Assembly: GCA_965202585.1 (NCBI GenBank)
Contig: OZ241829.1
Span: 4,154,001 to 4,218,000 of the forward strand
DNA length: 64,000 nucleotides
Reading direction: 5' to 3'
Source: Thalia democratica
Taxonomy: Eukaryota
Shown: in pieces, positions 1,705-64,000 of the stretch
Layout of the letters: every line of letters begins with the position of its first letter
Numbering within the stretch: position 1 is the stretch's first letter
The notes under the pieces: generated by a model
What the model saw: only the letters and a program-made list of their open reading frames with translations
Databases searched by the model: none
What the model was told of the DNA's origin: nothing
Program-made: the position numbers and the translations under genes

Positions 1705-27546
<25,842 letters not shown>

Positions 27547-28573
27547 TTTGGTCGTTTTGTAATATATTTTTTTACAAGCAGGGACGACTTATTGAAGCAT
27601 GCTAACTTAATGCTGATGTTAATATAATTAATTTGTGATAATCTGTTGAACAATTAGCAAGATTAACTGCTGTTGATGCGGTTTGCTTGCAGTTGTTAAC
27701 ATTTATTACAAGTTACAATGTTTGTTAACAACTGTGTTTATTTATTACCAAATACATATGTTACTAGTATATGTTTAGTTAATTATGTAACCATGTAAGT
27801 TTTATTTTTTAAAAGCTTTGTTTACATTGAAAAGCTTTGGCATACTTTTATTTTATTATTTACAAAACTTAAAATACGTGATGAGTTTCTAAAAAGAAAA
27901 GAATATTTTGTCAATGTATACTCATTTAAAAACAGCAGATATACTTTAAAAAGGAATAATACTTATCTTGTTTATGTTGCAGACTCAGCAGTTAAATATT
28001 GCTAACTTGCTTATCAGCTTTTGATGAGGCCTGCAACATTTCAAAATGTTGTACAGTTGATGTGTAATAATGAATCGTAGCTTGATTATTTTACAAACAA
28101 ACAAACTTTTTTATTAACTCCATTTAATTTTACTTTTCATTAACTACTTTACTTGAAAAAGTCATAACTTTTAAAAGACAATTACTTTAAAGCCAACCTG
28201 TCTAAATTATTAATAATTAAGTTTGAATAACTTAAGCTGCTTGAATGTAGATTAACACAACAATTTATTTAGCGACACGTGCCTCGGTTATTATGACGTA
28301 ACAATTAGCAAACAGCTCAACAGGCCTTCAAACAATATCAAGTTGACATTATTTACATTAAAAGGGGACTTGAGCAACTGTTGAGCAAACATGAGTGCTC
28401 TTGAACATTTAAAACTTTCCTAATCCAAACAAATCATTCTAGTAAAGTAAAAATCAAACAAACCACATTCCGACTGATCAAACAAAAAATAAATTAAATT
28501 AAAATTAAGACTAACAAGTTGTAAAAGTTTCAACTTTTTAAACAGCTCTTGTCTACTGATATGATATGCTCAC

Positions 28574-29030
28574 ATTTTAACTTTTCAATTTCATTTCTTC
28601 TCCTCTCTCGCTCCGATCTGCCTCGGGCTTGATGAAGTCATCCGAGCGTGAAAGAAGAGGAAGCCGCAACAAGTCGACACGATTGAATGGTTTCATCGCA
28701 CTTTAAACGTTCAAACTCGGTGCTTTTTTCATCGCTTCTCTTTTTTGTTTTCTGTTTCAAATCGAAATAATTTTGTGTTTCTTTGAACGGGTGCAATGAA
28801 GCTTCTTGTTGCTGATTGATTGATTTGAAGCCGATTGTTTTCTGTTTTTCCCAACAAACAGAAGTACCTCGACTCCCGTCTTTCTTTGAGGTAATTGGAT
28901 CACTTTGGTGGGTATCACACGGGGTACGCTAATATTTGAAAGAATTTTAACAAAGTTTAAATAAACAAACATCCATCAAAACTTTGGTGCGTGAAAAACA
29001 AACTTTTTATGTGTTTTGAGGCTCAATCTT
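28574..29030 (-). other. Putative non-coding first (5' UTR) exon or proximal promoter region of Gli
   Basis: GC-richer island about 1 kb upstream of the ATG exon with a minus-strand donor-like gtgagc at 28573; strongly conserved in copy B. No transcript evidence is available. Confidence 0.35.
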
Positions 29031-29499
29031 TGTTTAGTGCCGAAAAAATAATTTCAAGAATGCAAGTAATTTCTAAAAATTGTAGTTTTCACGTTATAAT
29101 ATAATTTCACCTTTAAATTATTTTGAATAAGTTTAATTTCACGTTATTACATAAGTTTCAAAGTTTCAACAGACTCAAGTATTTAAGTATGAAAAGTAAC
29201 TTAAAGTAAACAAGTTTCAATCAATTTTGAAATATAACACTTTCACAATTTAAAAGAACTTCACCTTTCAGTCTGTTTTAGTCAATTCTACATATTTCAA
29301 ATAATATAGTTTTATTATTGTTTTCGAGTTTCTACGCTTAGAAAAAAATCACTTAAAATATACAATGGTAATAAAGTTTAAAGACCGTTTAATAGCTTAA
29401 AGCTTGTATATATATACATTTAGCAACACTTTAAAGCATTTATTAGCCTTTTAAAAGTTTCAAACCAATTTAGTATATTATGCTCGTTAAAAGAATTAT

Positions 29500-29840
29500 T
29501 AACTTTAACAGCCAGCCCATTATGCAGATTCCTGCACGCTCCAAAACCAACAAAAAATATTTTCTCATCAATCCGCATAATTACCGTCAATTATGACGTC
29601 ACTAACGAGACTCAATAGCGGAAATGAGATTTTCGATATTTTTTTACCAACTTGTGCGTAGCAACGAGCCAATAATCGCATCGCAGGTAATCGGTTGCCA
29701 TGACAACGGTTTTGTGGGAGCCAGTGGTTGAATCGGATTAGTTCGGATGCTGATTGCGGATGGTTAGTTGTTGGCGGATAACTGAAGAATTGTTTGTTCT
29801 GTTGCCTGTTTGCGGTTGTCACTTGTAACTGATACAACAA
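29500..29840. promoter_or_regulatory. Conserved cis-regulatory module upstream of Gli, copy A (CRE, CCAAT, RFX X-box, GGATTA)
   Basis: GC-richer island with TGACGTCA 29594-29601, gccaat, GTTGCCATGACAAC 29694-29707 and GGATTA; retained in all three copies. Confidence 0.65.
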
Positions 29841-32800
29841 AACAGCAAACTGTTTTTTTTTTTCAAGGATGATTTTTAACAGGGTATTTTAATGTACATA
29901 TTTTGTTTACTTTTTTCTAAGGTGTTAAAAACCACAATCGTAAAAATATTGAAAATAAGTTATATTCAACAATCATTTTCTACATTTTGTTTTGTTTACT
30001 TTTACTTGTGATCATCGCACTAGCGTAAGACAATTGTTAAGTAATAAACTTTTTAACAATTTAACTTTTGTAATAATTGTATCATTTTCTACATACATAC
30101 TATTAATACTTGTTGCAATATTCAAAAGTTTAATATATAAATACAAAACAGAAAGTTTAAAACTAAAAATTATACAATATAATATAAAAATACTTAAATT
30201 ATATAGAATCTAATAATAATAAAATAATTTTAAAATTATTAGCTTGAGTAACAAAAAGTTTAATAAACTTTTCAATAAAAACTTTTTCAGATATTTAAGT
30301 TTTTTAGGTTAAAAAATACAACATTATAGGATTAAAAATAGAATTTCAAAGTCTATGATAAACTGTGTAAACTTTTTTCTGCTAAAATTGATATTTTTTT
30401 TGCAACAAACGTTCCTATTCTAGTACTTAAAATGCACGTAATTAGAATGTTAAACACTTGAAACTTAAAGTAAAAAAGATTTTAAAATATTGATAAACAT
30501 CATAAAACTTGAAAAGTGATTGTTCTAAATACAATGTAATTAAATACTAACACAATTTTGCACTTTTATATGGAATGTAAAGGTCAATGAAATAGAAAAG
30601 TCACACGTTTGTTAGAGTGAGCAACTTTACTGTAAATAGCACAGATGCTAAACACAGGTGGCAAAAATTTAAATTTGAAAAAAGACGGTGTATTACAGTG
30701 AAATCTTAATAAAAAAATGTGAGTAATTTATATTAGTAGAAGTTTTTAAATGTTTCATGTGTATCTGTTTTTGATATTTTCATCTATCTATAGTATAGCA
30801 ACGTTTGAAATCAAAAAGTCAACCTTGATATAAATGTTTAACTTATTTATCAATACTTTAAAAATAAGTACATATTACTATTTTATTTATTACGTATATA
30901 CTTTACAAAAGTTTGAAAAGGTTAACGGACTATGAAGTTTAAAAAGTTATTAAGCACATTTTTAATTTTTGTTTGACAAAAAATATTATAAAACTCGTTA
31001 TAAACCAGTTACGCAAACAACTAAAAAATAACAATGTATTTTAATTCTAAAAAAGAAGTTACATACATATTTTACAAAAAAGTAAGCGACTACTTTTATC
31101 ATTATTTATTATTGTTGCTTTCCATTATTTAGTTTTAATACTTTAAAGATTAACCAATCAGGTTTAATTAAGTTTTTCAGTTTCGAATTCTATTCATTAT
31201 CGTTTTAAAGTCTGTTTTTTACTTATAGCAACTTATGTTGATAGGTAGTTCGACTTCCTATTAAGCTTTACTGCTTGATTTTAGCTCGAGGGTTAGACAG
31301 TGTGTGATTATTTTACATAACAGACTAAAGTACCTGAAAACATTGTCATGTCTGTTGTAATAACAAAAATATTTAAGAAGCCAAAACGTTCAAGTTTAGT
31401 TTTACAAAGTCTTTTACAGCAGTATTTGAACATTTCAAATTCGTTGAATGTATTTTTGATTGTATTTAGCAGTTTACATAACTTTTGACTTTTGAATTAA
31501 TGTTATCAATTGTGTATTAAGAAAGAACATGAATATTTTGTTATTCGTTGACTTTTTATAATTTCTTATTGTTTTTAAGATGTTTTACATATTCTAGTTT
31601 AAAAAAAATCAAACTTTTAAACACTCTATATATAAGCTCGCTAATAGGGTAGTAAAACGTTAGTTTTAGTTATTAGTTTTATTCTTTTTCAGCTAATTAA
31701 AAAAACTTGAAAAAAAAAAAATAAAGTTCTTTTTACACTTCTAAAGTAATAGCAAATATTTTTATTTTGAAAGTTAGTTATTTGTTAGTTTTACAACTGT
31801 AACTTAGAATAACTTTCAACAGTTGAACTGATAGTAACTGAAAAAAATCATTGAAAGCATGACAACTTTTGTGAGTCAAACCGAATGAAGTGTTTTATGA
31901 TGCAATATAAAATGCTGTCATACACAATACTTGAATGTTGTGTTTGTAGCTCAATTGACTGACTTGATACAATTACTTTGTACTTTTTAGTTTAACTTTT
32001 AAGTTGTTTCAATTTTTCTGAGTTTTAGTAGTTGAGTTATTATTTTCTATTTCGTTATAATGCACAAAGTTTATGCCGTTAAAGGGTTTTAGGACAAATA
32101 TAGTTAAACAATGTTTTAATACAATGATTAAAATATAATATACTTGTTTTATGTGTAGCTTGTTTTAACAGCAATATGGTATTACCCTTTATAAATGAAA
32201 ATAAGCACTTTTAAATAAAGTACTTTGATTGAAAACAAAAATATTGGTTGGTTCTACTATCTTTATATTTATACACTTTAAATTCATATATATAAATCTT
32301 AAGTCACAAATTCTAAAATATAGATTTAATAAAAAAAAATATTTAAATTTACTGTTTTATTGTTGCAGCTAGTTGATTATTTAATTTAAAATAAAATATT
32401 AATTTATACGTGTAAATAAAGTTGGAACAGTTTATCTTTTATTATTAACAATATCTTTTTTTTTAATTACTTAAATGTCATTAATAAAATTATAATAATC
32501 TAAAAAGTACTACATTATTACACGCAGTAGATGCTTAAGAATGTTGCTGACATAAACAAATTATCAGAATTTTATATCAGTTACAATTAATTGCTTACAT
32601 CTGTTGCAACTTTTATGTTCGGCTTCAAGTGACAGCCAAAACATAAATCAACAAAATACAATAAAACTGTTTGAATAATCCAAACTTCAAAAGTTTCATG
32701 ATATTTTATGCAGATTTAGTTTGATATTAAGATTACCTAAAACAACAAATTTATTTGTTTGTCAAAAACTAAAAATGAAAAGTTTTAACATAAAAAAAGT

Positions 32801-35800
32801 TATTATCTATTACCATTTACTAAAAGGATCTTTTTTAAAGGATATGTTTTCAAAAACAATTTGATTTTATATTTTCAAAACTTTACATACTTGTATGAAC
32901 CGTATACATTATAACTTGGTTAAGTTTTATATTACGTTAAAACCATACTTGTCAGTTTAACCATATCTGACAGTTAGTAAACTTTACAATGATGTATCAC
33001 AAACTGATAAATCAACAACACTTAAGTTCATGCTTTTTTATTAATTATGCTTGTCAGTTTATCTTGTATTTTTGCTGAGGTTTAAAATTTACAACAAGTT
33101 ACCAGAATGGAAGGCATAACTAATAACTGGTAACAAATTGTTGTTATTACAAACAGTGAAGCAGTTTAAAAGTTGTGATTATAACAATAAGTTTGAAATT
33201 TGATCCGTTTCTAACTGTCTTGTAAAACTGTACAGTATTATGTTGAACTTTTACAGTACCTAGTTATACTCTGAGATTTTGTTTTAGTTTTAAAACCTTT
33301 GAGAATTAACTGGATTCTTTACGTTTCGTATTAAGCTTTCGTTGGCTTTAATAAACTTGACTATTTGTTCTCTGTTTAATAAACAAGCTACAAAATTTAA
33401 AAAATTTTAAGAAGTAATTAAAATTACTATTAACGATGAAAAAGCCAACATACTTTAATTAACTTCCAGTTTTTTACATTCAAATATAAAGTAATAGGTA
33501 GAAAGAAGTAAAAACAACAATTCATAAAAAATTAGCTTTTTCTCATTCAATTTATTCACACTTTTCAGTTTTTCAGCTAATTTACAAAAAGGTCACCTAA
33601 TCTGATCGATGACCCTACAGTTCGGCTTACAAGTTAAGCGGAGCATTTCGACACTAAAACTTTTCTCAACTTTATTGGCGAGACTTCACTAACACGGCTT
33701 TATTAATTTGCATGCTGATGTGATTTGTTCGGACTATTTTGCTTACCGATTCAACGGTTGGTAGTGAAAACAAGCAGAATTGGGAAAAACCAAAAAGTAA
33801 TTTAGTTGTAACATTATAAGTAGCCAAAGATTTGTCGACACAACATATTTGAGCACACACAGCTATCAGTATCAGTAAAATAACAAACATTTATTTCCAT
33901 GAGAACAGTTTCATGTTGACGGACAGCAGAATTACGCGCCTCTCTCACATTCGGAAGCTGTTCTCTCGTTTTCTTATTCTCTCTGGAACAGTTTCTCTTT
34001 TTTTTATTTATAAATGCGTTTTTGATGTTTACGTCTTTTTACGGTCTACCAGTCCCGAGGTCTTAATGGACTTTTTACAGCTTGGTAACAAAAAACGGCT
34101 CCCATATAATTTTCTTTGGCATTGATTTAATTTGATATAATTTTTAGCCCTTAATTTATTGGTTGTTTCTTTCAACTGGATGGTACTACTGGATGGTAAT
34201 TAGCAAAGCTGTTTTCGAATAAAAGACTAAAACGTATCTTCGAAGTAAAATAAACATATTTTAGTAATGTTTAAGAAGATAAACTTTTATATGTAAACTT
34301 GTTTACTTTTCAACTTTTTAAAAATTAAATATTATTGCTGAATGAATTTATATAAGTTGTTTTAAAATCCTCAAGTTTTACATTTCAAATTTGTGACGTC
34401 TTTTTTGAAGATAAATTATATATTGATTGTCGCAATTATTTATAAAATCCTTGTTGGTTGTCTGAAAAAATTATAAAATGGTTTGGGAAACATATTAATT
34501 GAAAAGTAAACTAAGCTTTTATGAAAGATAGCTTTTCAAAATGGTATATTAAGCTAGAGAACCAAAGTTAAAATAACTTTTTTAGAAATAAAATTGTGCA
34601 GCAACAATTTATTAGTTCTTAAAGAAAACTAACTGTTGTTGTCTTGTTTAAATTTAAATTAATATAAAACTATACAAACAACAAATATAAAATAATTCTT
34701 TTTATGTTAAAACAAAAGTTGTATTTTGTTGTTTTGAAAAAAGATTGTATCTATTTTAAATATAAATAACATTTTCTATTAAAACATAAAAAAACCAACG
34801 TGGGCTTTTATCTACTTGATACTGAAACTAAAACATCTGATGATAAAATTTTCATTCCGTAGGGTTGTTTATATGATAAGAAGATTTTGCAGTAATGAGT
34901 CATATTTTACTGCGTGGTACTTTTTGTTTATTTGCATGAAATTATATAAGAACCAATAAAATAATGAATTTTCACCTTTGTTTGGCACTTGCTGATTTGG
35001 CATGAAATTATACATATTCTATGCAAAAATTGTCATTTAAAGTTAATTTGTAGTTACTGAATATGTTTATATATTTATTTATTTCTTTTTTGTTTATATA
35101 AAAATATAAAGGTTTATACGACCGTTTCGTTTATGTACTATATTACCTCATATACTCCTAAGTAAAGCTAAAATTTATTAACAATGTTTAAAAGAATTTT
35201 AGAGTTTGAAAATTTCCTGAGTACATGACGTAGTATTAATGAAAGTTTTGTACAGCTAATTGAGTTTGAAAATATGCTGATCTTGTTAGTTTAATGATTT
35301 AAACATAATAGTTTAATATATATATGTGTATACACTTTACTTTTTATTCTTGCATATAGTGTTTTAGAAAAAAAATATTATAATTTATATAAAGCTGATT
35401 ACTTTTTAGGGTGTACATTATTTTACTATTGTTTTGCTTAACTGTTTGAAATTTAACTATTTTTTTATCACTCAGTAATTTAAACTATTTGTAATTTTGA
35501 AAGTTCTCAATATATAATTTAAACTTCAATTATAAATATTTAAGCAGCTAGTCTGATAAAAATACCTGTCTTGTAAAATTCGTTAGACGTTTAATCATTA
35601 ATTAAGACCTGAATATTTTCTTAATTTGAGAAAAAGTCCAGGTGTTTGAAAATTCCTGAAAGATCAGTCAACGTTTTTCATTCATAAATTTCAACTTGTA
35701 AACTTTATGTCTGCTTAATGAGGCTTATTGAGAGGGCAAGTAAATCTAATGTTTTTAACTTCCTCCTAAAATAAATTTTCTTAAATTTTTATACTGTTAC

Positions 35801-37270
35801 TATTAGCCTGAAATCTCATCACTTTTAAGTTTAATTAAATCTGTTTACAGAACTGTTTTATTTTAAGTTTTAAACTGGTAGTGAACCATAAATAATTGAA
35901 TAGTTAATTATTTTGATACTTGTCACAAGGCTGTTTTAAAGTAATTTATAGTACAACTTACAGATAATTTTATTAATAGACTTATTAACATTCTCGTTAA
36001 TGCTAAATGGGTGATGAATTGCATTCTACAAATTTGTGCTCAATTTATTTTACTGGTGATTTATGAGGAATTTTTAAAGATTTTTCTCAAATAACAGTTT
36101 TTAAGTTTTAAATATGTGATGTTTTTTAACTTTATGAGGTTTATAAGCTATTTAACTGTGTAAAACTTTGTTTATACAATTTTATCAGCTTGTCTTTAGT
36201 AAAAAGTTGCTACTTTTCCCTTAAAAGAAAATGACAAGTTTAACAAATAGCTAAAAATTTACATTTCTTTACGTTTCCTTCAATTCAGAGCGGTATAAAA
36301 GAATGCTTAAGCCTGTGTAAAAACTTGTCCTTATCTTAGAAATTATATTTAAAAGTAATCGACGTTTTTGTCACGATAATAACGTCCTTGTGACACCTAA
36401 AAACTTTTCATGCGGAAAAAATACTTAAAATTCCCAACAAACAAAATTAAGTATCTCACAAACGAACGGAATAACCACCTAATTTGCATGAAATCTGTAT
36501 AATACTCGTGCAAAACAAATATCAAAAAGTTTATTTTACCTCTAATGAACTTGTAAGAAAATATTGCATTAAGTTTAACTCATTTGTGGTGACTTGTTTA
36601 CTTTATATAACGTATTAGTTATTTTTTTTAAAGTACAGTTTTACCAGTTTACTTAGTTATAGACATATGTATATAGGTTTCATAATACATATAAAAATAA
36701 ATATTATGTTATGTGTTACAATTAAACTGGTGTTTTAAATGGCTAAATAAGAAATTCAGAACTTTGCTAAACATTTAAACTAATTGGCTTATATTTCGAC
36801 GCGAAAATGTCAAAAATATTCCTAAAAACTTTACTAATTTAAATGACGTCTTTACTGTATTATACTACATTTTTTCGTATTTAAAAACATAATAAGTTCT
36901 TACTTCTTTAAAACTGTTACCCAAATTTTAATACTTAAAAAATTTTTAAGACTATTTACATTGAAAATCGAAATTATACTTCTTTTTTCTTAAGCAGTAA
37001 TTAAATTCAATCAAACAAAAACAAACATAGCTAACGTTAAATGAAACAATTAAAGATGCTAACTTTAAATTTCAGAGAACCTGTACAAATCATTTTTTTA
37101 CAGATAAAAATTTGAGTTTTAACTTAAACAGATTTTAAATGATACATAATATTAAACTTTTTAATTTTATCGTTGTTTATCAAATACTCATATCAATTTT
37201 TTGTGAAGTAGCTGAGAATATTTGTCTGCAAAGTCTAACAGCTGAGGTCAACTTAGCAAGGATTAACAAA

Positions 37271-39029
37271 TGTAGTGATGTACCGGACCCGGATCCGGAC
37301 TTTTTTTTCAAATCAGAATCCGGCCGGAACCGGATCCGGACTTTTTTTTCAAATTAGAATCCGGCCGGAACCGGAATTTTTTTTCAAATTAGAATCCGGC
37401 CGGAACCGGATCCGGACTTTTTTTTTAAATTAGAGTCCGGCCGGATCCGGATATCAGACAAAAATGGAAATATCCGGCCGGACCCGGACCCGGATAGTGA
37501 GTACGGTACATCATTAGTATAAACTAGCCTAAGTCACAATGAGGTTTTTAAAAACTAAAAAAATAACTTTAATCTAATAATAAGTAGAACAGCTAGCTAC
37601 AAGGTTTACAAATTTAGGTGTTATTTACAATTAAAAATCTGAAACCAAGTTCATGAACAAAATACACTAGAAAATTACAAAATATTGAAAACTGGATCAG
37701 CTCAAACTCATTCAAAATCTAAAAAAAAACTAGCTTGAGTTTTTACAAAAAACTAAACTAGCTTGAGGCAGGCAGTCCAAGATTTTCTAAAATTCCCAAA
37801 AATTTTCAAACTAGCAGGGTTGCCACTGTTTAAGTCAATAAAACTAGCTAGAGTGAGTATAAACAAGCCTGAGTCAGAATGAAGTTTTTAAAATTACTTT
37901 AATTTAATAATCAGATAACAGCTAGCAAAGGTTGACAATTTGGTAGTAAAGTTGTGGACTGATTGTGGTACACTTAACTTTTTAGTAGTACCCATCATAA
38001 TTAAATCCTACCGTATATAATTAATATCTAACAAATAGTAAATTCAATCTGAGACTACTTTCTACAATCAGACACGACAGTTTTGAGTGATGAATCTTTT
38101 ACATAAAACACAACAAGAAATACTAGCATATTCAAAATTGTTAATTACTTTGGTAACACTTTATAAACTGGAAACTATTTAAATCTATTTCAAAAGACTT
38201 AAAACAATATACTAAAAATTAAATAAAACTTTTAGTAAACAAGAAACTGTAAAATTTTTCATAAACTATTAAACTATAAACCTGGCTTAATGTTTAAACA
38301 ATTAAACACCAGTTGAAATATTCACTTTTAAAACAAAACACTACTTACAATAAGCATTCACAAAAAGTTCAAGATATTTTGTTGCTTCAAGCTGCTCACC
38401 AAACTAACTAACTAACTGCTTACATATAAACTACCTGTCATGTTCTGATGTTTTGTTGCATCAGTATTTAGTTTGAAACATTTCGTCATATGATTCTCAT
38501 TGGCTCGTACATTCAACCGTATTAACTCTAAATATTCTCTGAACTCAACTTTAAACAACAAATAATGCAAGTATTCATTCCAAAGTTTTCAATTTTACAA
38601 CATTTGTAAAGAGTTGCATTTCTTAAATGTTTATTTCATAGTTTAAATGTAAACAAGTGTAAATTAGTCACGTGCACGAAATGAGCCAATCGGGGTGGGT
38701 GTTTAATTTTAAGTGACGAAAATGACTCTTATTAATTAACACAGGGTTTGTTTTTAAAAAAATATTTTTCAATATGCTCTTTTTTACTAACTAGATTCGG
38801 GTCCGGCCGGATCTCTATTAGGATCCGGCCGGACCCGAATCCGGACTTTTTTTTTAAAATAGAATCCGGCCGGAACCGGGCCCGGACTATTTTTTTAAAT
38901 TAGAATCCGGCCGGAACCGGATCCGGACTTTTTTTTCAAATTAGAGTCCGGCCGGATCCGGATATCAGACAAAAATGGCAATATCCGGCCGGACCCGGAC
39001 CCGGATAGTGAGTCCGGTACATCACTACA
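37271..39029. mobile_element. MITE-like (possibly hAT-related) non-autonomous element: two palindromic CCGG-rich modules bounded by an 18-bp perfect inverted repeat
   Basis: TGTAGTGATGTACCGGAC at 37271 and GTCCGGTACATCACTACA ending 39029. Modules 37271-37516 and 38794-39029 carry about 41-bp internal repeats (tagaatccggccggaaccggatccggac-T run-caaat). No ORF and no clear target-site duplication. Confidence 0.65.
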
Positions 39030-46324: not shown

Positions 46325-46665
46325 ATTAACTTTAACAGCCAGCCCATTATCCAGACTCCGGCACGCTCAAAAACCAACAAAAAACGTTTTCTCATCAATC
46401 CGCATAATTACCGTCAATTATGACGTCACTAACGAGTCTCGATAGCGGAAATGAGATTTTCTATATTTTCTTACCAACTTGTGCGTAGCAACGAGCCAAT
46501 AATCATTTCGCAGGTAATCGGTTGCCATGACAACGGTTTTGTGGGAGCCATTGGTTGAATCGGATTAATTCGGATGCTGATTGACGGATGGTGAGTTGTT
46601 TGCGGATAAGTGAAGAATTGTTTGTTCTGTTGTCTGTTTGTGGTTGTCACCAGTAGCTGATACAA
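46325..46665. promoter_or_regulatory. Conserved cis-regulatory module, copy B
   Basis: TGACGTCA at 46421, X-box at 46521-46534; CCAAT and GGATTA intact. Confidence 0.55.
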
Positions 46666-52600: not shown

Positions 52601-54368
52601 CAGTTATACTACAGCAGTTTTTTGCAATAAAGTTGCTTTGATTAATAGCTATTTTTTAACTTAATTGTGTTTATAGTTTCCAATCAATCAATAAAAAGTT
52701 TTAATTTTTTTAATTTCTTTAGAAAAACTTTAAAAATGTAAGTAATTTATTCATATCCGGTCTACAAATGTTTTTATATTACTCAAACTGATCAATAAAT
52801 ATCAACAAATAAAAATGTTTTCATTAAATCTTTATATAAAAAACTCTTCATAATAAACGATGATAATTATATTTCACCAGTAATAATTATTTTAATGTAT
52901 ATATATAAAGTCTTTTATTTCAGTTTGTCCGTTTATATGTATTAACTTAATTTAATTTTCTTAGTGATTTAGATTTTTAATACAAAAAAATAGTTTTGAA
53001 AACTTTTTTTTAATCAAAAATTTATGACGTAGTAGCAATAATTTTTTTGACGAAATATTAATATAAAGCATTATAATAATTTAATTACCAACACATTTAA
53101 AATAATGTTTAGTTGGCGTTTTTTATGACTGGTGCTTAGGTATAAGTGTTTGAATAACTATTCGGCAAAAAAATTTATAAAGGGCCAACTTAACAGGTAT
53201 AAAATACCCAGTGAATAAACACAAACTAAATCAAACATTTTTTACACTTTTTTTTTTCTTTAAATGTTGTTATTTATTATAAATTAAATTTCATTCTCTG
53301 TGTCTAACTGTAAAAAACTTTTACTCTAACAAGTTTTTACTCAAGCTACTTATTAAGCTTTATCTGAAGTAAATGCAGCAGTATATCAGTATAATAACAT
53401 GATATTTGACACTAATGACTCAAAATTACTGCTTTGAAAATGAATAATTTCGAGTAGCGATATCAAGCATAAACAACAACAAACTAGTATTTTTGATGTC
53501 AGTGTTTTCAACAAGTCATAAATTTATTTTCAAAAATGCTACTTTATTTTAACTACTCTCAAAAACTAGTATCACTTTTAAAAAATTATATTCTTTTTGT
53601 TATTTTTAATACTGAAATCTTTTTTTTTTGTGTTTCTATCACACTAAGTAAGTATAACTAAACCAATAATGATAATATATTTCTTTAAATATTTATTAAA
53701 AGTAGTGTTAATAAATTATAGTTGAAACGGGCCTAATCAACGTAAGGTTAAAAGTGTTTTGAAATAATAAAAAAAAACTCAAAATTTAACTAAATTTCCA
53801 GTTAATCATTACTGTAAAGTATATTATTGAAAAATTAATTTGTTATTTTAAAGTTTAAACTTTTTGAATAAATGGTAATACGAATAGTGAAGTAATAATT
53901 CTAAACATTTATTTATAGTAATAAATAAAGCTTTCAGTTTTCAGTTAGTATAAGCTACTAAAATCTTTAAAATTAAGAAATATAGTTTTATATTAAGCAT
54001 CGAAAAACTGATAACATATTTTAGCTTTATTTAAGTTCTTCAATTTAATTTTTGTGTAGGATGTATGTGATATTTAAATATCATAATAAGGTAGTTTTAC
54101 AATTTTTACAGTTAATATGTTTTGTTCAACTAGAATGAGTTTATCCAAACTCTTAGACTAACATAGATGTTATCTAATACTTTTATTCTTTAAGAAACTA
54201 AGTTAAATTTAAACTTAAGTATAAAATAGTATCTAAAATGAAATAAAATACAATTACAGCTTAATAAACTATCTGTTTTAGGTATTTTTATTTTTTAGTA
54301 AACTTTTAACCTTAGGTTTGTTTTGAGAGTTCTATATTAACAATAAAAACTTAATAGTCAATTTAAAC

Positions 54369-54391
54369 TATATATATATATATATATATAT
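54369..54391. repeat. (TA)n microsatellite in duplication copy B
   Basis: About 11 TA units; the homologous site in copy A (near 41482) has only about 4-5. Confidence 0.9.
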
Positions 54392-57300
54392 TAGTACTGT
54401 ATTTCAACCACTATATTCATATTTTGTAAATATTTAGAATAGACTTTAAAAGTTTCTTTATCTTAGATTTTATTAAACGATTATGAAAGCTGTGATGTGT
54501 GATAAAACAACTTTGTAGATTTTATAAATTTAGTGATAATTCTTTTTTCTATAAACTTTATTATTAATACATGTTTCAAATTATACACCAAAAATTATGA
54601 TAATTAAACGAACTAAATTATTCATAGAAGCTATATTGGTATAATTAGTACAAATATAAAAATCATTTGTAAGTGTTAATTATTTTAAGATGTCGAATTT
54701 ACTTAGTAGTATTTAAAACTTGTTTTAGTAGATGTTGTTAAAAAATATTATTTTCTTAAACTATTACCTATTTCTTGTATATTTATATATATATGAGCTT
54801 ATTGAATGTTTTGTTGCTTAGAAATCAATTAAATTTTATATTTTTATAATCAAAAATCTATTATTAATATGATCAAATTTTTTTTTTATTGTTTCTACCT
54901 TAAATTATTTGTAGCAACTTTGAAATCTACCCAAAAATTACTTTTTGCAGTTTTAAAACAAATGCTAAAAGCTAACTGCAAAAAAAAGAATAAAATAAGT
55001 TTTCAACATTTGAAGTATTTTATTAATTTACAAATGTTGTATTTTATAAACAATAAAAAAGGTAAATAAAACTACAGTTAAACACTGTTAACAGATAAAT
55101 AATTTGCAGTAATCATACATAAGCGTACCTAAATTATATAATCTAGTGTTGTTAATTTTATTCCCAGACAAGTCTAGATAATTGTTTGCTCTTAGATTTA
55201 AATATCAAATGAAAAAAATATTTATTGTATGTAAGTAAAACTTTAAGTTCATAAATTTTTTTTTGGTTCACTAATAACTTACATTTTCTTCAAACATTTT
55301 GTTTAGAAATGTAAGTGTATAAGAAAATATTTGTTTAACAACATAAAAACTTAAACTAAATAGTTAGTTTTGCACTGTATACTTTTTTTTTGTATATTGA
55401 ATACAAATAAACAGATTAATACGTTTATATTTTCAAAAAATTTGTAGCACAGCATACTAAATGTTAAAGACCTTTTTAACTTAGCTAAAAGAAACTTTTC
55501 AAATAAATTTTTTGACCAAAAAGATTATAGGTTAATAAATAAATTTTTTACTAGCTATTTTTTGATTAAGTGTAGAAAAAATGTTTATTTTTTTATTCTA
55601 AAATTATTAAATAAGTTATAAAGATAGAAAAATTTTAAAGAATTTTTTTGTCTTAACTTTACTTAAAATTTTAATTTTTTATACATGAATCAAGCATAAA
55701 ACTAAAAACGCATTTAAAAATGATAGTTATTAAATATAGCCCAGTGCTTTTTATAGAAAAACTTAAATTTTTGTTGTTTATGTGGTTAATAGATCAAAAA
55801 ATTACTATTTAACTTAAAACCTGTTTTTTGCTAAGTAGTCTGGTACTAACTTCATAATTATTTTCATTTAGTGGTTAGAAAATTAAACCGATCAATTACT
55901 AAGTATTAGGTTTAACTTATTTACTAATTAACTTTTTAACCTTTGTCTGCTTAGCTTCCGATTTATTATTCGTGTTTTTAAGTACACAAACTAGTCTGAT
56001 AGATAATACTCTTAGTATAATCAAAACTATATTCTAATACCTTAATTTTTTTTATGAATGTCCGTTGATTGTAAGACCTTTTTTTGACTCATTGAATTTA
56101 TCAGATAAATGTTCTTGTATAAAACTGCAGGTTTTCAAAGCCAAATAAGAAAGTGATTTTAATAATTCATATACGAAAACTACCAAATTTACTAAACATT
56201 AGGATTTTTTAGACATTTATTAAAGATTATGATTAAACAATAAACTGATATAAACTATTTAAGTTCAGGTACACTTAATGTACAACAATTTTAGTTTTTA
56301 GAAAAAAAACATCTTAAAATGTTTTCCTATGTTCTACAATCCACTTTTTCAACCATATAAAAAGGTTAACTGCCTCTGATTTTAAGAATAATAATACATT
56401 CTTAACTTATGACGCTGCTATTTTAGCACAACCTTACGTATTTTTAGTGAGAACTCTGTTTTAGATTATTAATTATTAAGTAAGTTAATTAAGTTATATT
56501 TTGATACATTTTAACGGAATTCTTTTTACACTCTTCTTATATTAAAAGCTTAAACATTTAGTTTTGGAAAATATTCTAAAACTATATTTTTTTGAGAGTT
56601 TTTGATAGATAACTCTGATGAAAGTATTTGCTATTTATTTAACGATTAATCAGTAATTTTTTGTACAATATATAAAAAAGAACATTTAAATACTTATATT
56701 GTAGTGAAAATTACTAGTTTATATGTTTATTTTTATATAAAAAGTAAGAAAAAAAACTAAGTTTTTAAAGTAAGCCTTTAGATCTTTGTTTTTATGGGTT
56801 CTATAAATGGTATCGTAATATGTATCAAGCCGTAAGTATTTTATCAAAATCCGTTAGACTACTAAAACATTTACAACCAGTACTTTTAAAACCTTTGTTA
56901 AACACTATTTATTTTGGTAAGTAACTACTTATTAAACATTCGCTGAAGTAAATGCAACAACATATCCGTATAATTATATTATATTTGAAACTAATGACTC
57001 AAAACTACTGCTTGGAAATAAATATTTTCGAGTAGTGATGAAGACCATAAACAATAGCAAACTAGTGTTTACCAGTTTATCAACTACGGCTATTATCAGT
57101 TTTCAATAGACTAAAAGAAGTGTATATATGCATTTACATTCAACAAGTTTTATATTGGTGAGAAATTTGATTATGTTAATTATTATTTGGTTTTTAACGT
57201 TTATTGATTTTTAGATATTCCTTTTGTAGTTTTGACATTAAGTTTCTAACAGTTATTTAAAAAAATGTAAACAGCAGACTTTCAAGATGAATAAGTTAAA

Positions 57301-57884
57301 TTGTTTTCTTTAAAAAACCAAAAAAGTTTATAAATGTTTTCATTTGCAAAAGTTTTGCTTTTAAGAAAAAACAAATTTTAAATTTGATTTTAATGAAGAC
57401 TGTGGGAAAGCAAAAAGGAACTATAACCGAAAGCTTTAAATATCACTTTAACTCAAGATACATAAGATATTAAAAAAATATTACTTGGTGTTTTGTGTAA
57501 AACTAAAAACTAATTTAGTTTAGTTCAAAATACCAAATGGAGTTTGTCTAAACATTTAATCAATTATATATATTTAATATAAAAAATAAATATAAACAAA
57601 AAATTAGTTTACAGCTTATGTGTTACTAAAATATTTACAAAAATTTGTTTATCTTATTTGTTGTAAAGATATTCGTTATCATCACATATTTTGTTAATAC
57701 TGATGTAAACTTATTGCACTTTTTAAACACTATGATATACTTTGAAATAATTGAAGCAGATAAAATGTTCCAATTATGTCATTGGTAGATTCGTATCGAT
57801 AAATTTAACCTTAAAACCCTATTTCAAATCATTTCTTATTTCAAATCATTTCTCGTTACACATTGTTATACATTACAGAAATAT

Positions 57885-60800
57885 TAATCTTTGTTTAGTG
57901 CCGAAAATACAATTTCAAGAATGCAAGTAATTTCTAAAAATTGTTGTTTTCACGTTATAAAATAATTTCACGTTTAAATTAGTTTGAAAAAGTTTAATTT
58001 CACCTTATTTCATAAGTTTTAAAGTTTCAACAGACTTGAGTATTTACATATAAAAAAGTATGCAAGTTTTAATCAATTTTGAAATACAACATTTTCACAA
58101 TTTAAGAAAATTCATGTTTCGAACTTTTTGAGACAATTTTATTTTACTTATTTCTAAAAAATATAGTTTCATTATTGTTCTTGAATTTCTACGCTTAGAA
58201 AAAAAAATCACTTTAACTATACAGTGGTAATAAAATTTAAAGACCGTTTAATAGCTTAAAGCTTGAATATATACAATTAGCAACACTTTAAAGTATTTAT
58301 TAACCTTTTAAAAGTTTCAAACCAATCTAGTTTATTTTGATCGTTAAAAGAATCATTAACTTTAACAGCCAGCCCATTATGCAGACTCCGGCACGCTCCA
58401 AAACCAACAAAAAACATTTTCTCATCAATCCGCATAATTACCGTCAATTATGACGTCACTAACGAGACTCGATAGCGGAAATGAGGTTTTCGATTTTTTT
58501 TTACCAACTTGTGCGTAGCAACGAGCCAATAATCGCATCGCAGGTAATCGGTTGCCATGACAACGGTTTTGTGGGAGCCAGTGGTTGAATCGGATTAACT
58601 CGGATGCTGATTGACGGATAGTGAGTTGTTGGCGGATAACTGAAGAATTGTTTGTTCTGTTGCCTTTTTGCGGTTTTGATGTTTCTTGTTTTCTTAAAAT
58701 AGAGAATTGTATTCTTTTTAAAGATGATTTTTAATACATTTCTTTATGTTAATGTTTTCTTTACTTGTCTTTTTAGTTGTGATAAAGAATTTAATATACG
58801 ATGTAACAAACAAATCTCTTTAAGTTTTCAAACAGTTAATAAATATTTTCTTTGATTGTTAAAACTGTTTATGGTTAAAATTTGTTCTCTTCAAACTTAA
58901 AAAAAAATGGTAAAAATTATAAAGTTTACAGTTTACATTATTTTAATAACGTTTTTTTTTAAACAGCTTGATTTTAATAGCTTAAAATTTAAACTAAAAA
59001 AATTTAGCATATATACTACAAAAATAAACACTTTTATGAACATTGAAAACAAAACCTTTCAATTTGATTTCTTTAAAAATAAAAAAATAAATAAAGTTAT
59101 ACTTGTTTAATAAACGGTAAAAACCTTACTGCTATTTCTAAAGTTTATTTGTTTTTAATAAACGTTTCTGTATACTAAAAGTTTCTTTTTTTAATATATG
59201 ATAATAATAACACTTAATTAAAATTTTAAACACTTCAAACTTAAATTTGAAAATATTGATAATTATCATAAAACTTGGAAAGTTGTTGTTCTAAGTACAA
59301 TGTATTTATTTACTTACACAACTTTGCACTTTTATATGTAAAGGTCAATAAAGTAGATAAATTACACATATGTTAGAGTGAGCAACTTTACTGTAAATAG
59401 CACAGATGATAGACACAGGTGGCAAACGTTTAAATTTGAAGAGGTAAAGTAATTCTTTTATTACAGTGAAAATTTAATAAATAAGCGATAGTAGTTTAAA
59501 TTGGTAAAAATATTTGAATATCACATTTGTTCATGTTTAAAAAGTTTTCTTTAAAAGTGTTATTTGGTTTAAAAGCAAAAGGTCAAACTTTATGCAAATC
59601 TTTTTATTTACCTGATTTTTATCAACATTTAAACAAAATACCATAAATAGTAATCTATGTGCTATAATTTTGTTAATTAAAAAAGTTGATCTGTATACTT
59701 ACCTTATAAAAGTTTTAATAAGTTGAATAACCAATCTGTTTTGTTAATAAAAATTATAAAACTGATTTATTTTTATTACGTTAAAGTAAAATGATTTACT
59801 TATCAACAAATATACTCAACTAATTGGAAAAAATAAACAAATAGTCAGGTAAAACCTAAATTACGACATAATTAGTTATAAGAAAAATTAGCAACTGTTT
59901 TTAATACTATTTAGTAGTTTAAAGACTGAAAGATTAATCAAAAAAACTTAATTATAGTTTGTCAAGCAATATTTTAGTTTCAAATTCCGTTCTTTATCGT
60001 TTTAAAGTCTGTCTTTACTTACAGCAATTTTTGTTGATGAGTAATTCAACTTCCTATTAAGAAGTTTTACTGCTTGATTTTAGCTCGAGGGTTAAACAGT
60101 GTGTGATTAATTTACATAACAGACTAAAGTACCTGAAAATATTGTCATGTCTGTAGTAATAACAAAATATTTGAGAAGCCAAAACGTTCAAGTCGTGTTT
60201 TACAAAGTTTTTACAGCAGTATTTGAACATTTTAAAATCCTTGATTGTATTTTTAGTCGTATTTAGCAGTTTACATAACTTTTGACTTAAGAAGTAATAT
60301 TATCAATTGTGTGTTGAGAAAGAAAATAAATATTTTGTTATACGTTGACTTTTTATATTATCGAGTTGTTTTGAAGATGTTTTACATACTCTGGTCTTTA
60401 AATAATCAAAGTTTTAAACACTTAATGTATGAGTTCGCTATTAAGTTAGTAAAACTTAAATTTAGATTTTTAGTTTTACTCTTTTTCACTTAATTAATAA
60501 AGGTCAAAAAAAATTTAAAGTTCTTTTCACACTTCTAAAGTAATAGCAAATAATTTTATTTGAAAGTTAGTTATTTGTTAGTTTTACAACTGTAACTTAG
60601 AATAATCTTCAACAGTTGAAATGATAGTAACTGAAAAACGTCATTGAAAGCATGACAACTTAAGTGAGTCAAACCGAATGAAGTGTTTGTATGATGTAAT
60701 ATAAAATGCTGTCATACAGAATACTTGAATGTTGTGTTTGTAGCTCAATTGACTGACTTGATACAATTACTTTGTACTTTTTTAATTTAACTTATAAGTT

Positions 60801-63800
60801 GTTTCAAATTTTCTGAGTTTTAGTAGATGAGTTATTATTTTTTATTTTTATAAAATGCACTAATTTTATGCCATTAAAGAGTTTTAGGACAAATATAGTT
60901 AACAAATTTAAAATAAATATATTATATTTTATATGTAGCTTGTTTTAACAGCAATGTGGTATAAACCTATATCAATAAAAATATGGTACTTTAATTGAAA
61001 ACAAAGATATTTGTTTATTCTAACTTTTTTACATTTATACACTCCAAATCTTATATAAATCTTTAAGTCACAAATTCTCAAGTGAAATAGATTCGATCAA
61101 AATTATTTTTTAATTTATTTTTGTTAAATGTTTGTTAAATTAAAGTACAAGTTTATTACTTTATTGTTGCATCAAGTTTATTATTTAATTAAAAATTAAC
61201 TTATACGTGTAAATAGAGTAAGAACAATTTATCTTTTTTTTATTAACAATATCTTTTTTTGTTATTTAAATGTCATTATTAAAATCATAATAAACTACAA
61301 AAGTACTACATTATTACACGCGGTAGATGCTTAAGAATGTTGCTGACATGAACAAGTTATCAGCATTTTATATCAGCTACAATTAATTGCTTACATCTGT
61401 TGCTGTTTTAACGTTCGGCTTCAAGTGACAGCAAAAACATAAATCAACATAATCCAATAAAACTGCTTGAATAATCCAAACTTCAAAAGTTATATGAAAT
61501 TTGATGCTAATTTTAATTTGATGTTTAGATTACCTATAAAAACAAATTCATTCGTTCAAAAAAAAATTCAACATTATTAAGATTGTCGGCTATTGAAATC
61601 TTACTAAAAGATTCTTTTTTTAATTAATATGTTTTGAAAAAAAATATAATTTATATTATCAAAATTCTACATACTTGTATGAACCTTATACATTATAACT
61701 TGTTTAAGTTTTATATTACGTAAAAACCTAGGTTGTCAGTTTAACCATATCTGACAGTTAGTAAACTTTACAATGATGTATCATAAACTGATAAATCAAC
61801 AACACTGAAGTTCATGCTTTTTTATTAATTATGTTTGTCAGTTTATCTTGTATTTTTGCTCGGTTAAAAATTTACATTACCAATATGAAAAGGCATAACT
61901 AATAACTGGTAACAAATTGTTCTTATTACAAACAGTGTAGCAGTTTGAAAGTTGTAATATTAATAACAATAAGTTTAAATCATGTTTCGCTTCAAACTGT
62001 CTTGTAAAACAGTACAGTATTATGTTTTGTGTTAAACTTTTACAGTATCTGTTTATACTATGAGATTTTGTTTCAATTCTAAAACTTTTAAAAATTAACT
62101 GAAATTTTTACGTTGCGTATTAAGCTTTCGTTGACTTTAGATTTTACTAAACATAATTATTGGTTCTCTTAAAAATAAAAAAAGCTACAAACTATTAAAA
62201 ATTTAAAGGTTTAATTGGAATTACTATTAACGATTACAAAGCCAAACATACTTTAATTACCTTCCTGGTTTATACATTTAAGTATAAAATAAAAAGTAAA
62301 AAGAAGTAAAAACAACAATTCATAAAAATTAAGCTTTTTCTCATTCAATTTATTATCACTTTTCAGTTTTTCAGCTAATTTACAAAAAGGTCACCTAATT
62401 TGATCGATGACCCAACAGTTCAGTTTACAAGTTAAGCGGAGCATTTCGACATTAAAACTTTTCTCAATTTTATTGGCGAAACTTCACTAACGCGCTTTAT
62501 TAATTTGCAAGCTGATGTGATTTGATCGGATTATCTTGCTTGCTAACCGATTCAACGGTCGGTAGTAACAACAAGCAGAATTTTAGTAGAAACATTATTA
62601 GTAACACAAGGATTTGTCGACACAACAAATTTCAGTAGACACAGTGATCGGTATCAGTAAAAATTTTTAGTTTGTGTGTTCCATGAGAGTGTAATCATGT
62701 TGACGGACAGCAGAATTACGCGCCTCTCTCACATTCTGAAGCTGTTCTCTCGTATTTAGTTATCTCGTTTTTCAACTCTCTCATTATTTTTTAATTGCTT
62801 TTTTTTATGTTTACGGCTTTTTACGGTCCATCAGTCCCGAGGTCTTAATGGACTTTTTGCAGCTTGGCAACAAAAAACTACTCCCATATAATTTTCTTTG
62901 GCATTGATATAATTTGATATAATTTCTAGCTCTTGTTTCTTTAGTTGTTTTGTTCAACGGTTACTTCTGGACAGTAAATAGCAAAGTGTTTTTGAATAAA
63001 AGACTAAAACGTATTTTCGAAGTAAAATAAACATATTTTGGTAGTGTTTTAGAAAATAAACTTTTATATGTAAACTTTTTTACTTTTAAACTTTCTAAAA
63101 ACTAAAAATAATTGTTGAAATACTATATACCAGTTATTTCAAAACTCTCAAGTTTTACATTGTAAATGTGAGACGTCTTTGTTGAGAACAAACTACACAT
63201 GATTTATTGCAATTATTTATAAAATCTTTGATTGGTTGTCTAATTATAAAATGATTTGGGAAACATACTACTAGAAAACTAAACTAAGCTTTTATGGATG
63301 ACTGCTTTTCAAAATTGGAATATTTAGCTAAAGAAAAAAGTTAAAATACTTTTTTTAGAAACAAAATTGTGCAACAACTATTTATTAGTTCTTAAAGAAA
63401 ACTTACTATTGTTGTCTTCTTAAAATTTAAATAAATATAAAATTGTACAAACATAAAACATAATATAATTCTTTGTATGTTAAAGCTAAAATTGCTTTTG
63501 TTGTTTCGAATAAAGATTGTATCTATTTTAAATATAAATAACATTTTTATTAAAACACAAAAAGTCATCGTGGGCTTTTATCTACTTGGTACTGAAGCTA
63601 GAAAATCTGAAGATAAAATTTTAATTCTGTAGGGTTGTTTGTACGATAAGGAAATTTGCAGTTATGAGTCACTTTAAACTGCGTGATGGTTTTTGTTTAT
63701 TTGAATGAAATTATGTAAGATTAAATAAAATAATGAAATTTCAAATTTGTTTGACACTCGCTGATTTGGCATGAAATTTTACATATTCTGTGCAAAAATT

Positions 63801-64000
63801 CACAGTATAAAGTTAGTTTGAAGCTACTGTGTATATATACACATTTATATATTTTTTTTATAAAAAAAATAGGTTTATACGACCATTTTGTTTATGTAAT
63901 ATATTACCTCATATACTCCTAATTTAAACTAAAACTTATTAACAATGTTTAAATGAATTTTAGAATTTGCAAATTTTGTAAGTATATGACGTAGTATTAA
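57885..64000. repeat. Segmental duplication copy C (partial, runs off the window)
   Basis: Begins at the equivalent of A about 29025; window end equals A about 35239; anchors 58551 (A 29694) and 62701 (A 33916). Confidence 0.93.
58365..58675. promoter_or_regulatory. Conserved cis-regulatory module, copy C
   Basis: TGACGTCA at 58451, X-box at 58551-58564; CCAAT and GGATTA intact. Confidence 0.55.

What the first reader, a model, noticed from the sequence alone, without database searches (positions are those of the whole stretch)
28530..64000. The Gli upstream non-coding region is tandemly triplicated, with selectively conserved islands
Seen: three head-to-tail copies (about 16.8 kb, 12.5 kb and over 6 kb) with no coding gene lie directly 5' of a normally single-copy developmental regulator. 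AT-rich spacers differ heavily by substitutions and indels, while discrete 100-350 bp islands are nearly identical in all copies. Inference: the islands stayed under purifying selection in every copy after duplication, so the regulatory landscape was amplified without duplicating the gene. The copies give a built-in phylogenetic footprint of Gli enhancers. Three copies and heavily diverged spacers argue against simple haplotype mis-assembly.
Basis: partly seen in the sequence, partly recalled or inferred. Interest (0 to 1): 0.72.

Follow-up and report, generated by a model that had tools for sequence, protein, structure and literature searches.

The report
Triplicated non-coding flank of Gli
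The roughly 17 kb of non-coding DNA just upstream of the single Gli gene of this AT-rich planktonic tunicate really is present as three old tandem copies, but the "conserved islands" mostly come from copy-to-copy sequence exchange and from the way they were picked, so they are not a reliable map of Gli enhancers.

Summary
Self-BLAST shows three head-to-tail copies: A 28533-45363, B 45364-57885, and C 57886 to about 9.5 kb past the window end. Pairwise identity is 76-84%. The unit is confined to this locus and has no conserved ORF, Pfam hit or Rfam hit. Gli is single-copy, on the minus strand, so the array lies 5' of it. Contigs of four public runs from four studies carry both A-type and B/C-type letters, which argues against a haplotype artefact.

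Identity is over-dispersed, and base composition does not explain this. However, the slow and fast stretches of the three copies barely coincide. Shared rate variance is about 0.00-0.03, against 0.15 expected if the islands evolved 4x slower in every copy. Where the outlier copy is 4-10x closer than usual, the other two copies are only 0-22% closer. Simulations fit a shared slow-down between none and about 2-fold and reject 3-4-fold. Genealogies switch at kb and sub-kb scale, which points to unequal crossover or gene conversion.

One roughly 400-bp block, kept in all copies, holds an X-box, a CCAAT box and a CRE. It is the best candidate for a real regulatory module. No RNA or chromatin data were available.

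The scan has noted similar non-coding arrays elsewhere in this genome (FLRT, GATA, FGF).

The parts
2900..21656 (-). Recognisable coding exons of the Gli/Ci gene. Zinc-finger exons: 12290-12541, 10117-10335, 9650-9838, 8454-8687. N-terminal exons: 13682-13984, 16356-16604, 20340-20744, 21327-21656.
   Evidence: Stop-free frames. Exon 9650-9838 best matches five-finger GLI, PDB 2gli, E 3.2e-42. There is only one full match in the genome.
27463..27546 (-). Candidate first coding exon of Gli: an ATG in good context, 28 codons, then AAG|GT. It overlaps an X-box at 27491-27504. Not verified.
   Evidence: Read directly from the sequence. No RNA data were available.
28533..45363 (.). Copy A of the tandem unit (16,831 bp), the one next to Gli.
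   Evidence: Self-BLAST. The left boundary is sharp at 28533. Exact-match contigs are present in run X1.
45364..57885 (.). Copy B (12,522 bp). It lacks the A segment 34139-35500, the transposon of A, and the last ~676 bp of the unit.
57886..64000 (.). Copy C. It starts at the equivalent of A position 29025, so it lacks the first 492 bp of the unit. It runs about 9.5 kb beyond the window, and its end matches the end of A.
   Evidence: using loci L011 and L014 fetched.
57584..57885 (.). About 300 bp of unrelated filler at the B/C junction. It replaces the end of B and the start of C, so this junction differs from the A/B junction.
29342..29817 (.). Best-kept block ("island 2") in copy A. Its copies lie at 46170-46645 (B) and 58201-58675 (C). 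It carries a CRE TGACGTCA (29594), a CCAAT box (about 29668) and an X-box (29694-29707), all unchanged in the three copies.
46521..46534 (+). X-box GTTGCCATGACAAC in copy B. The matching site in copy C is 58551-58564. Two further independent X-boxes lie in unique DNA at 25187-25200 and 27491-27504.
   Evidence: Genome-wide the motif class has 266 matches against 1 for the reversed control.
28790..29030 (.). Stretch about 98% identical between A and B (B: about 45611-45850) and absent from C. A possible splice donor on the minus strand lies at about 28573, 40 bp inside the unit boundary.
   Evidence: The splice-donor reading is inference only.
31339..36478 (.). Segment R3, where A groups with C and B is the outlier. 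In 29826-31338 and 36479-45363 A groups with B instead.
   Evidence: Site-pattern counts. Heterogeneity among segments gives chi-square p about 7e-55.
37283..39027 (.). Young dispersed transposon inserted in copy A only. It has CCGG-rich 41-bp arrays at both ends.
   Evidence: At least 40 copies at 92-97% identity across the genome. Tandem arrays seen.
29991..30082 (.). 92-bp very high-copy element inserted in copy A only.
   Evidence: Dozens of 92-98% matches genome-wide. Contig depth is about 56,000 against about 100-200 nearby.
40418..40583 (.). Locus-specific element present twice per unit (second site 44009-44173 in A). This is an internal duplication older than the triplication.

Best explanation
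A stretch of about 17 kb of non-coding DNA beginning roughly 1 kb upstream of the likely Gli start codon was duplicated in tandem at least twice. This produced three head-to-tail copies that now fill about 45 kb of the roughly 60-kb gap between Gli (minus strand) and a divergently oriented C-type-lectin gene.

Since then the copies have behaved as a small concerted-evolution array. They decay neutrally (AT-biased substitutions, many indels, transposon insertions, deletions). This decay is interrupted by copy-to-copy exchange (unequal crossover and/or gene conversion), which resets divergence in patches.

The "islands" are mostly places where recently exchanged or by-chance little-changed patches of all three copies overlap. 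Picking them by three-way identity exaggerates their conservation. A slow-down truly shared by all copies is between none and about two-fold.

The roughly 400-bp block with an X-box (RFX-type site), a CCAAT box and a CRE is the most plausible working element. It is probably part of the Gli promoter-proximal control region, and it exists in three copies.

Shown: the structure, its locus specificity, its non-coding nature, the mosaic genealogy, and the lack of shared rate variation. Inferred: gene conversion as the process, and regulatory function of the motif block.
For: Structure
- Three copies and their boundaries.
- Confined to this locus.
- Non-coding and no RNA-family match.

Copies coexist in several samples
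- 33 of the 40 best-supported "other letters" in runs X1, X3, X4 and X5 equal the B or C letter.
- A-type contigs of X3 differ from the reference by about 2.4% and sit at about diploid depth.

Mosaic genealogy
- The segments differ in which copy is the outlier (p about 7e-55).
- Significant sub-kb discordant fragments: 29240-29376 (p=0.0007), 32470-32743 (p=0.004), 29542-29813 (p=0.02).
- Island genealogy is star-like and does not mirror the neighbouring spacers (p=0.0005-0.01 in three of four segments).

No shared slow-down
- Shared variance is 0.03, -0.004 and 0.008, with upper 95% limits of 0.12, 0.07 and 0.08. Own-lineage variance is 0.15-0.26.
- Independent-branch permutation gives 22.8 conserved windows against 26 observed (p=0.16).
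- The young-pair ratio is 0.78-1.09 where the outlier branch is 0.09-0.37 of normal.
- Simulation rejects rate factors of 0.33 and 0.25.

Motif block
-.
- The X-box class has 266 genome-wide matches against 1 control match.
Against: - Some co-location of conservation exists: triple-low windows number 21 vs 15.9 in the proximal half (p=0.05) and 23 vs 12.8 overall (p=0.0035).
- At matched GC, island-grade windows are 40% of proximal windows but only 2% of distal ones.
- All four substitution classes are equally reduced in the islands, with no AT-to-GC excess, so GC-biased conversion is not the driver.
- The motif block has branch lengths about half those of the youngest spacer branches, as expected under 2-fold constraint.
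- Normalising by segment removes the largest island from the shared-variance test.
- Lineage-specific misalignment near indels could mimic lineage-specific rate patches.
- No outgroup species and no spanning reads were available.
Confidence: 0.58

Rival explanations
1. The islands are Gli enhancers or promoter elements that have been kept by purifying selection in all three copies, giving a triple set of redundant (shadow) regulatory modules.
For: - Islands are concentrated in the promoter-proximal 5 kb (11 of 14), and composition does not explain this.
- Islands are almost free of indels (0-1% gap columns, against 16-39% in spacers).
- All substitution classes are reduced equally, and island GC (0.31) lies above the mutational equilibrium (0.27).
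- The motif cluster is intact in all copies.
- There is a modest excess of triple-low windows.
Against: - The cross-validated slow-down on independent lineages is only 0-22%.
- Shared rate variance is near zero.
- Simulations reject a shared 3-4x slow-down.
- Island genealogies are star-like and discordant with the spacers.
- Several "islands" are really two-copy patches. In 30592-30641 copy A has 6 private changes in 50 bp. In 32470-32743 copy C is the odd one.
- There are no functional or cross-species data.
Confidence: 0.25
2. Each unit carries a promoter plus a first non-coding exon. The array would then provide alternative Gli promoters and leader exons (A and B; C lacks the leader part), or it would drive unannotated non-coding transcripts whose exons are the islands.
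For: - X-box, CCAAT, CRE and a TATA-like run at about 29405-29416 resemble a core promoter.
- A GT donor candidate at about 28573 is kept in B, 40 bp inside the unit boundary.
- The stretch 28790-29030 is about 98% identical between A and B.
Against: - No holder among the listed runs is on record as RNA.
- An ATG-bearing exon candidate lies outside the repeat at about 27546.
- The islands show no folding signal or Rfam match.
- Splice sites were not tested.
Confidence: 0.12
3. Assembly artefact: the copies are diverged haplotypes or a mis-joined repeat, not three tandem paralogues on one chromosome.
For: Exact A-type contigs in run X1 sit at about half the depth of the unique flank (about 50 vs 95). 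No junction-spanning reads were examined.
Against: - Divergence is 16-24%, with kb-scale indels and two different junction structures.
- Up to four distinct sequences occur at one position in X1.
- A-type contigs at about diploid depth occur together with B/C-type contigs in X3.
- The same mixture appears in two marine metagenome runs.
- The 134 kb examined contains no N.
Confidence: 0.04

Closest known systems
Tandem duplications of non-coding regulatory DNA next to developmental genes, for example the IRX1/IRX2 intergenic enhancer duplications of rumpless chickens (PMC13696352) and the PRDM13/IRX1 duplications in North Carolina macular dystrophy (PMC9674966)
   Same: A non-coding flank of a developmental transcription-factor gene is duplicated in tandem and the gene is not. 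In the chicken case, extra enhancer copies raise activity in a dose-dependent way (abstract of PMC13696352).
   Different: Those cases are recent variants with a phenotype and tested enhancers. Here the copies are old (spacer divergence 16-29%), carried by every sample examined here, three in number, and untested for activity.
Concerted evolution of tandem paralogues by gene conversion or unequal crossover (general principle; my own knowledge)
   Same: The genealogy is a mosaic along the unit. There are patches in which different pairs of copies are closest. There are star-like, young-looking patches within older sequence.
   Different: This process is usually described for genes or rDNA. Here the array is purely non-coding, and the patches had been read as enhancers.
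Shadow or redundant enhancers and paralogous conserved non-coding elements
   Same: The same motif-bearing block occurs in several copies near one target gene.
   Different: Redundant function is not shown. A conservation signal shared by all copies is weak (at most about 2-fold).
RFX X-box promoter modules with co-occurring CRE sites (RFX3/CREB co-binding in human neurons, PMC11888390)
   Same: A near-palindromic 14-bp X-box lies about 100 bp from a perfect TGACGTCA in the best-kept block. The paper reports CRE as a top motif co-occurring in RFX3 peaks.
   Different: No binding data exist for this animal. Gli is not an established RFX target as far as I know.

Membership tests
Local tandem segmental duplication (not a mobile element) | Head-to-tail copies that are collinear over kilobases | tested here: met
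   Collinear HSPs at offsets of about 16.8, 12.1 and 28.8 kb.
Local tandem segmental duplication (not a mobile element) | The unit is absent elsewhere in the genome | tested here: met
   Only the three local copies match. Other hits are short inserted repeats.
Local tandem segmental duplication (not a mobile element) | Copies lie on one molecule, shown by spanning reads | not tested
Concerted evolution / inter-copy gene conversion | The closest pair of copies changes along the alignment | tested here: met
   Segment heterogeneity p about 7e-55. Sub-kb fragments p=0.0007-0.02.
Concerted evolution / inter-copy gene conversion | Rate patches are lineage-specific and not shared between copies | tested here: met
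   Own variance 0.15-0.26 against shared variance of about 0.
Concerted evolution / inter-copy gene conversion | GC-biased signature in converted tracts | tested here: not met
   No AT-to-GC excess in the islands; all classes are reduced 0.24-0.29. Unbiased conversion is not excluded.
Conserved non-coding elements under purifying selection in every copy | Substitution slow-down shared by independent lineages at the same positions | tested here: not met
   For the claimed strength. A shared factor of 0.33 or lower is rejected; factors of 1.0-0.5 are compatible.
Conserved non-coding elements under purifying selection in every copy | Conservation in other species | not testable with these tools
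   The genome has no relatives in the collections (header). The metagenome pattern scan found nothing.
Enhancer / promoter | Open chromatin, transcription start or reporter activity | not testable with these tools
   No holder among the listed runs is on record as RNA.
Gli/Ci zinc-finger gene | Five-finger Gli-type DNA-binding domain | tested here: met
   Exon 9650-9838 vs 2gli E 3.2e-42, ahead of ZIC3 at 1.9e-23. The other finger exons were read.
RFX X-box site | Match to the 14-bp palindromic consensus, and the motif class enriched in the genome | tested here: met
   Five matches in 134 kb against 0.00 expected. 266 genome-wide matches against 1 for the reversed control. Binding itself was not tested.

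The most novel reading that the evidence does not exclude
All three copies keep a working RFX/CREB/NF-Y-type promoter-enhancer module, maintained by selection helped by gene conversion. Gli in this tunicate would then be driven by a fixed natural array of three control cassettes. This would also tie Gli transcription to the ciliogenic RFX programme. It would be one example of a genome-wide habit of amplifying the control regions of developmental genes (FLRT, GATA and FGF arrays noted elsewhere in this scan).
Probability: 0.2. Interest if true: 0.6.

Novelty: new member of a known kind. Interest (0 to 1): 0.33.

Why it matters
If the copies were independent witnesses of constraint, the array would give a free map of Gli enhancers in an animal that has no functional genomics. 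The tests here show that this shortcut is unsafe: paralogous copies exchange sequence, and choosing the most similar windows inflates apparent conservation about four-fold.

The same caution applies to the other "amplified regulatory landscapes" reported in this genome. What remains of interest is a fixed three-copy promoter-proximal block with RFX, CCAAT and CRE motifs upstream of a single-copy Hedgehog-pathway effector. This is testable by reporter assays.

Tried and rejected
- Coding exons in the islands: no open frame shared by the copies, no period-3 pattern, no Pfam hit.
- Structured RNA, miRNA or tRNA: Rfam gave only sub-threshold hits in the CCGG arrays of the transposon. There are no tRNAs. 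Fold z-scores ranged from -3.5 to +2 with mononucleotide shuffles. A first folding script with my own dinucleotide shuffle hung and gave nothing. The second script timed out after 12 of 14 islands.
- Dispersed transposon as the unit: rejected.
- A fourth, older copy in 73.5-88 kb or in the unique DNA next to Gli: only weak, non-collinear, AT-rich matches.
- Base composition or low complexity as the cause of uneven identity: these explain little (R2 0.31 even with position included).
- GC-biased gene conversion: no AT-to-GC excess.
- Cross-individual diversity in islands vs spacers from public runs: not usable. The listed differences are almost all paralogue cross-mapping (33 of 40), and 335 rows were not shown.
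- Related species in metagenome contigs, using the CRE, CCAAT and X-box spacing pattern: 0 hits.
- Gli binding sites (GACCACCCA): none in the 134 kb.
- RNA evidence: no holder among the listed runs is on record as RNA. The first attempt failed because the server was busy.
Full report
**What is there**

The window is AT-rich (about 28% GC) with no N. Earlier notes of this scan describe the genome as that of an AT-rich planktonic tunicate. It is an 802-Mb assembly, and the window is C5:4154001-4218000.

A Gli/Ci gene lies on the minus strand.
- Zinc-finger exons are at 12290-12541, 10117-10335, 9650-9838 and 8454-8687.
- N-terminal exons are at 13682-13984, 16356-16604, 20340-20744 and 21327-21656.
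- Exon 9650-9838 best matches the five-finger GLI structure 2gli (E 3.2e-42).
- The Gli-specific finger-5 exon has only one full match in the genome.

Higher coordinates are therefore 5' of a single-copy Gli. A possible ATG exon lies at 27546-27463 but is unverified.

**The triplication is real**

Self-BLAST gives A 28533-45363, B 45364-57885 and C from 57886. I fetched 70 kb beyond the window. C runs to about 73,533 in extended coordinates, and its last 300 bp match the end of A. No further copy follows.

The next gene starts at about 88.2 kb on the plus strand. It has C-type lectin and F5/8-type-C domains. The array therefore fills about 45 of the roughly 60 kb between two divergently oriented genes.

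Junctions and size differences:
- The A/B junction joins unit end to unit start.
- The B/C junction lacks the last ~676 bp of B and the first 492 bp of C, and holds about 300 bp of unrelated DNA.
- Copy A carries a young 1.75-kb transposon (at least 40 copies at 92-97% identity) and a 92-bp high-copy element.
- Copy B has a 1.36-kb gap relative to A and C.

The unit itself occurs nowhere else in the genome.

**It is non-coding**

No open frame is shared by the copies. Island substitutions show no period of three. The longest frames have no Pfam match. Rfam, tRNA and folding scans gave nothing convincing.

**It is unlikely to be an assembly artefact**

I laid contigs from four public runs on 28500-34499: two organism labels and two marine metagenomes, from four studies.
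- X1 has exact A-type contigs.
- X3 has A-type contigs that are about 2.4% different from the reference, at about diploid depth.
- All four runs also carry the B/C-type letters. Of the 40 best-supported differences, 33 equal the B or C letter.

The copies therefore coexist in several individuals. Spanning reads were not examined.

**Is identity uneven?**

Yes. Three-way identity in 50-column windows has a dispersion index of 4.4 (p about 1e-78), and this persists within GC bins. At GC 0.2-0.3, 40% of proximal windows are island-grade, against 2% of distal ones. Picking windows with three-way identity of 0.9 or more gives 14 islands (2.1 kb in total), 11 of them in 29030-34100. In these islands all four substitution classes appear about 4x reduced, and gaps are almost absent.

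**Why I do not read this as selection in every copy**

1. The genealogy is a mosaic. In the spacers, A groups with B in 29826-31338 and 36479-45363 (dAB 0.12-0.16, dAC about 0.29-0.32). A groups with C in 31339-36478 (dAC 0.16, dAB 0.21). Heterogeneity among segments gives p about 7e-55. Sub-kb fragments also switch partner: 29240-29376 (p=0.0007), 32470-32743 (p=0.004) and 29542-29813 (p=0.02).

2. Island genealogies are star-like (pairwise 0.055-0.08 everywhere). They do not mirror the neighbouring spacers, as a uniformly slowed clock would (p=0.0005-0.01 in three of four segments).

3. This is the key test. Changes private to A, to B and to C arise on independent lineages, so shared constraint must make them co-vary along the unit. 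They do not.
   - Shared variance is 0.03, -0.004 and 0.008, with upper limits of 0.12, 0.07 and 0.08. Each lineage has its own extra-Poisson variance of 0.15-0.26. A 4x slow-down in a quarter of the windows would give a shared variance of 0.15.
   - Windows with 5 or fewer variable sites number 26, against 22.8 when the three lineages are permuted independently (p=0.16).
   - By circular shifts, triple-low windows are 13 vs 9.0 in R3 (p=0.08) and 21 vs 15.9 in the proximal half (p=0.05).
   - Where the outlier copy is 4-10x closer than usual, the other two copies are only 0-22% closer.

4. Simulations with the observed means fit a shared rate factor of 1.0 to about 0.5. They reject 0.33 and 0.25.

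The apparent 4x reduction is thus largely a consequence of choosing windows by their three-way identity.

**What remains in favour of function**

There is a modest excess of co-located conservation. Islands are restricted to the promoter-proximal third at matched composition. Island GC lies above the mutational equilibrium, with no sign of GC-biased conversion.

The block 29373-29774 has branch lengths about half those of the youngest spacer branches. It carries, unchanged in all three copies, a CRE (TGACGTCA), a CCAAT box and a 14-bp X-box.

Two further independent X-boxes lie at 25187 and 27491. Genome-wide the X-box pattern occurs 266 times, against 1 for its reversed control. Five sites within 34 kb is therefore exceptional. 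RFX and CRE motifs co-occur at RFX3-bound sites in human neurons (PMC11888390). Retention of a 14-mer inside a block with 0.91 three-way identity is not significant on its own (0.91^14 is about 0.27; my arithmetic).

**Most likely history (inferred)**

A first duplication separated C from the A/B ancestor. It is about twice as old as the A/B split (Jukes-Cantor 0.37 vs 0.18). Later exchange events made A resemble C over about 5 kb and homogenised shorter patches. A deletion then remodelled the B/C junction. Duplicated enhancers can act in a dose-dependent way (PMC13696352), so extra copies could matter. No activity data exist here.

**Context**

The scan has noted similar non-coding arrays in this genome beside the FLRT, GATA and FGF genes. 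One follow-up on a matrix-protein gene cluster also concluded that the islands there were gene-conversion islands. I did not test those loci.

Noticed in passing
window 12012-12363: A 35-bp unit repeated about 10 times (93% matches). Read on the minus strand, each unit contains the end of the zinc-finger-1 exon (..QEQLVQ) followed by GTATGT. This is an array of about ten copies of the exon end plus its splice donor.
   Followed up: partly
window 37283-39027: A young 1.75-kb non-coding transposon with CCGG-rich 41-bp tandem arrays at both ends. At least 40 genomic copies at 92-97% identity were scored, out of 3,245 first-look candidates.
   Followed up: partly
window 29991-30082: A 92-bp element with dozens of 92-98% matches on many contigs. 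Contig depth is about 56,000 in run X1 against about 100-200 for neighbouring DNA. It is probably a very abundant miniature mobile element.
   Followed up: no
genome-wide; e.g. G000:C1:25800165-25885743, C4:34183790-34595956, C2:57669269-58126223: The X-box pattern GTTRCCATGRCAAC occurs 266 times, against 1 for the reversed control. Many sites lie in same-strand rows spaced 8-100 kb apart, which suggests further tandem arrays whose units carry an X-box.
   Followed up: no
window 25187-25200 and 27491-27504: Two independent X-boxes lie in GC-richer blocks of the unique DNA between Gli exons and the repeat. The one at 25185-25201 shares an exact 17-mer with the repeat's block. The one at 27491 lies inside the candidate first coding exon.
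   Followed up: partly
window 1695-18292 and extended region: The palindrome TGACGTCA occurs 14 times in 134 kb, against 0.73 expected. Three of these lie within 80 bp at 6660-6738, inside Gli.
   Followed up: no
window 40431-40597 vs 44009-44173 (and 53342-53482 vs 56925-57071 in copy B): A roughly 165-bp locus-specific element occurs twice per unit at 78-83% identity, with no similarity in its flanks. This is a duplication older than the triplication.
   Followed up: partly
L012:4264-8533 (about 88-92 kb in extended coordinates) and onward to about 111 kb: The upstream neighbour is a large plus-strand gene with many C-type lectin domains and F5/8-type-C domains. It is oriented head-to-head with Gli.
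   Followed up: partly
window 2960-3247: Imperfect 36-39-bp tandem repeats lie within the last large Gli coding exon. They encode a repeated Q/N/H/S-rich peptide.
   Followed up: no
window 27587-28737: In runs X1 and X3 the unique DNA just Gli-side of the repeat is covered by single long contigs (1,151 and 1,669 bp) at full depth with almost no differences. The repeat itself is broken into short half-depth contigs. This stretch seems unusually invariant between individuals.
   Followed up: no
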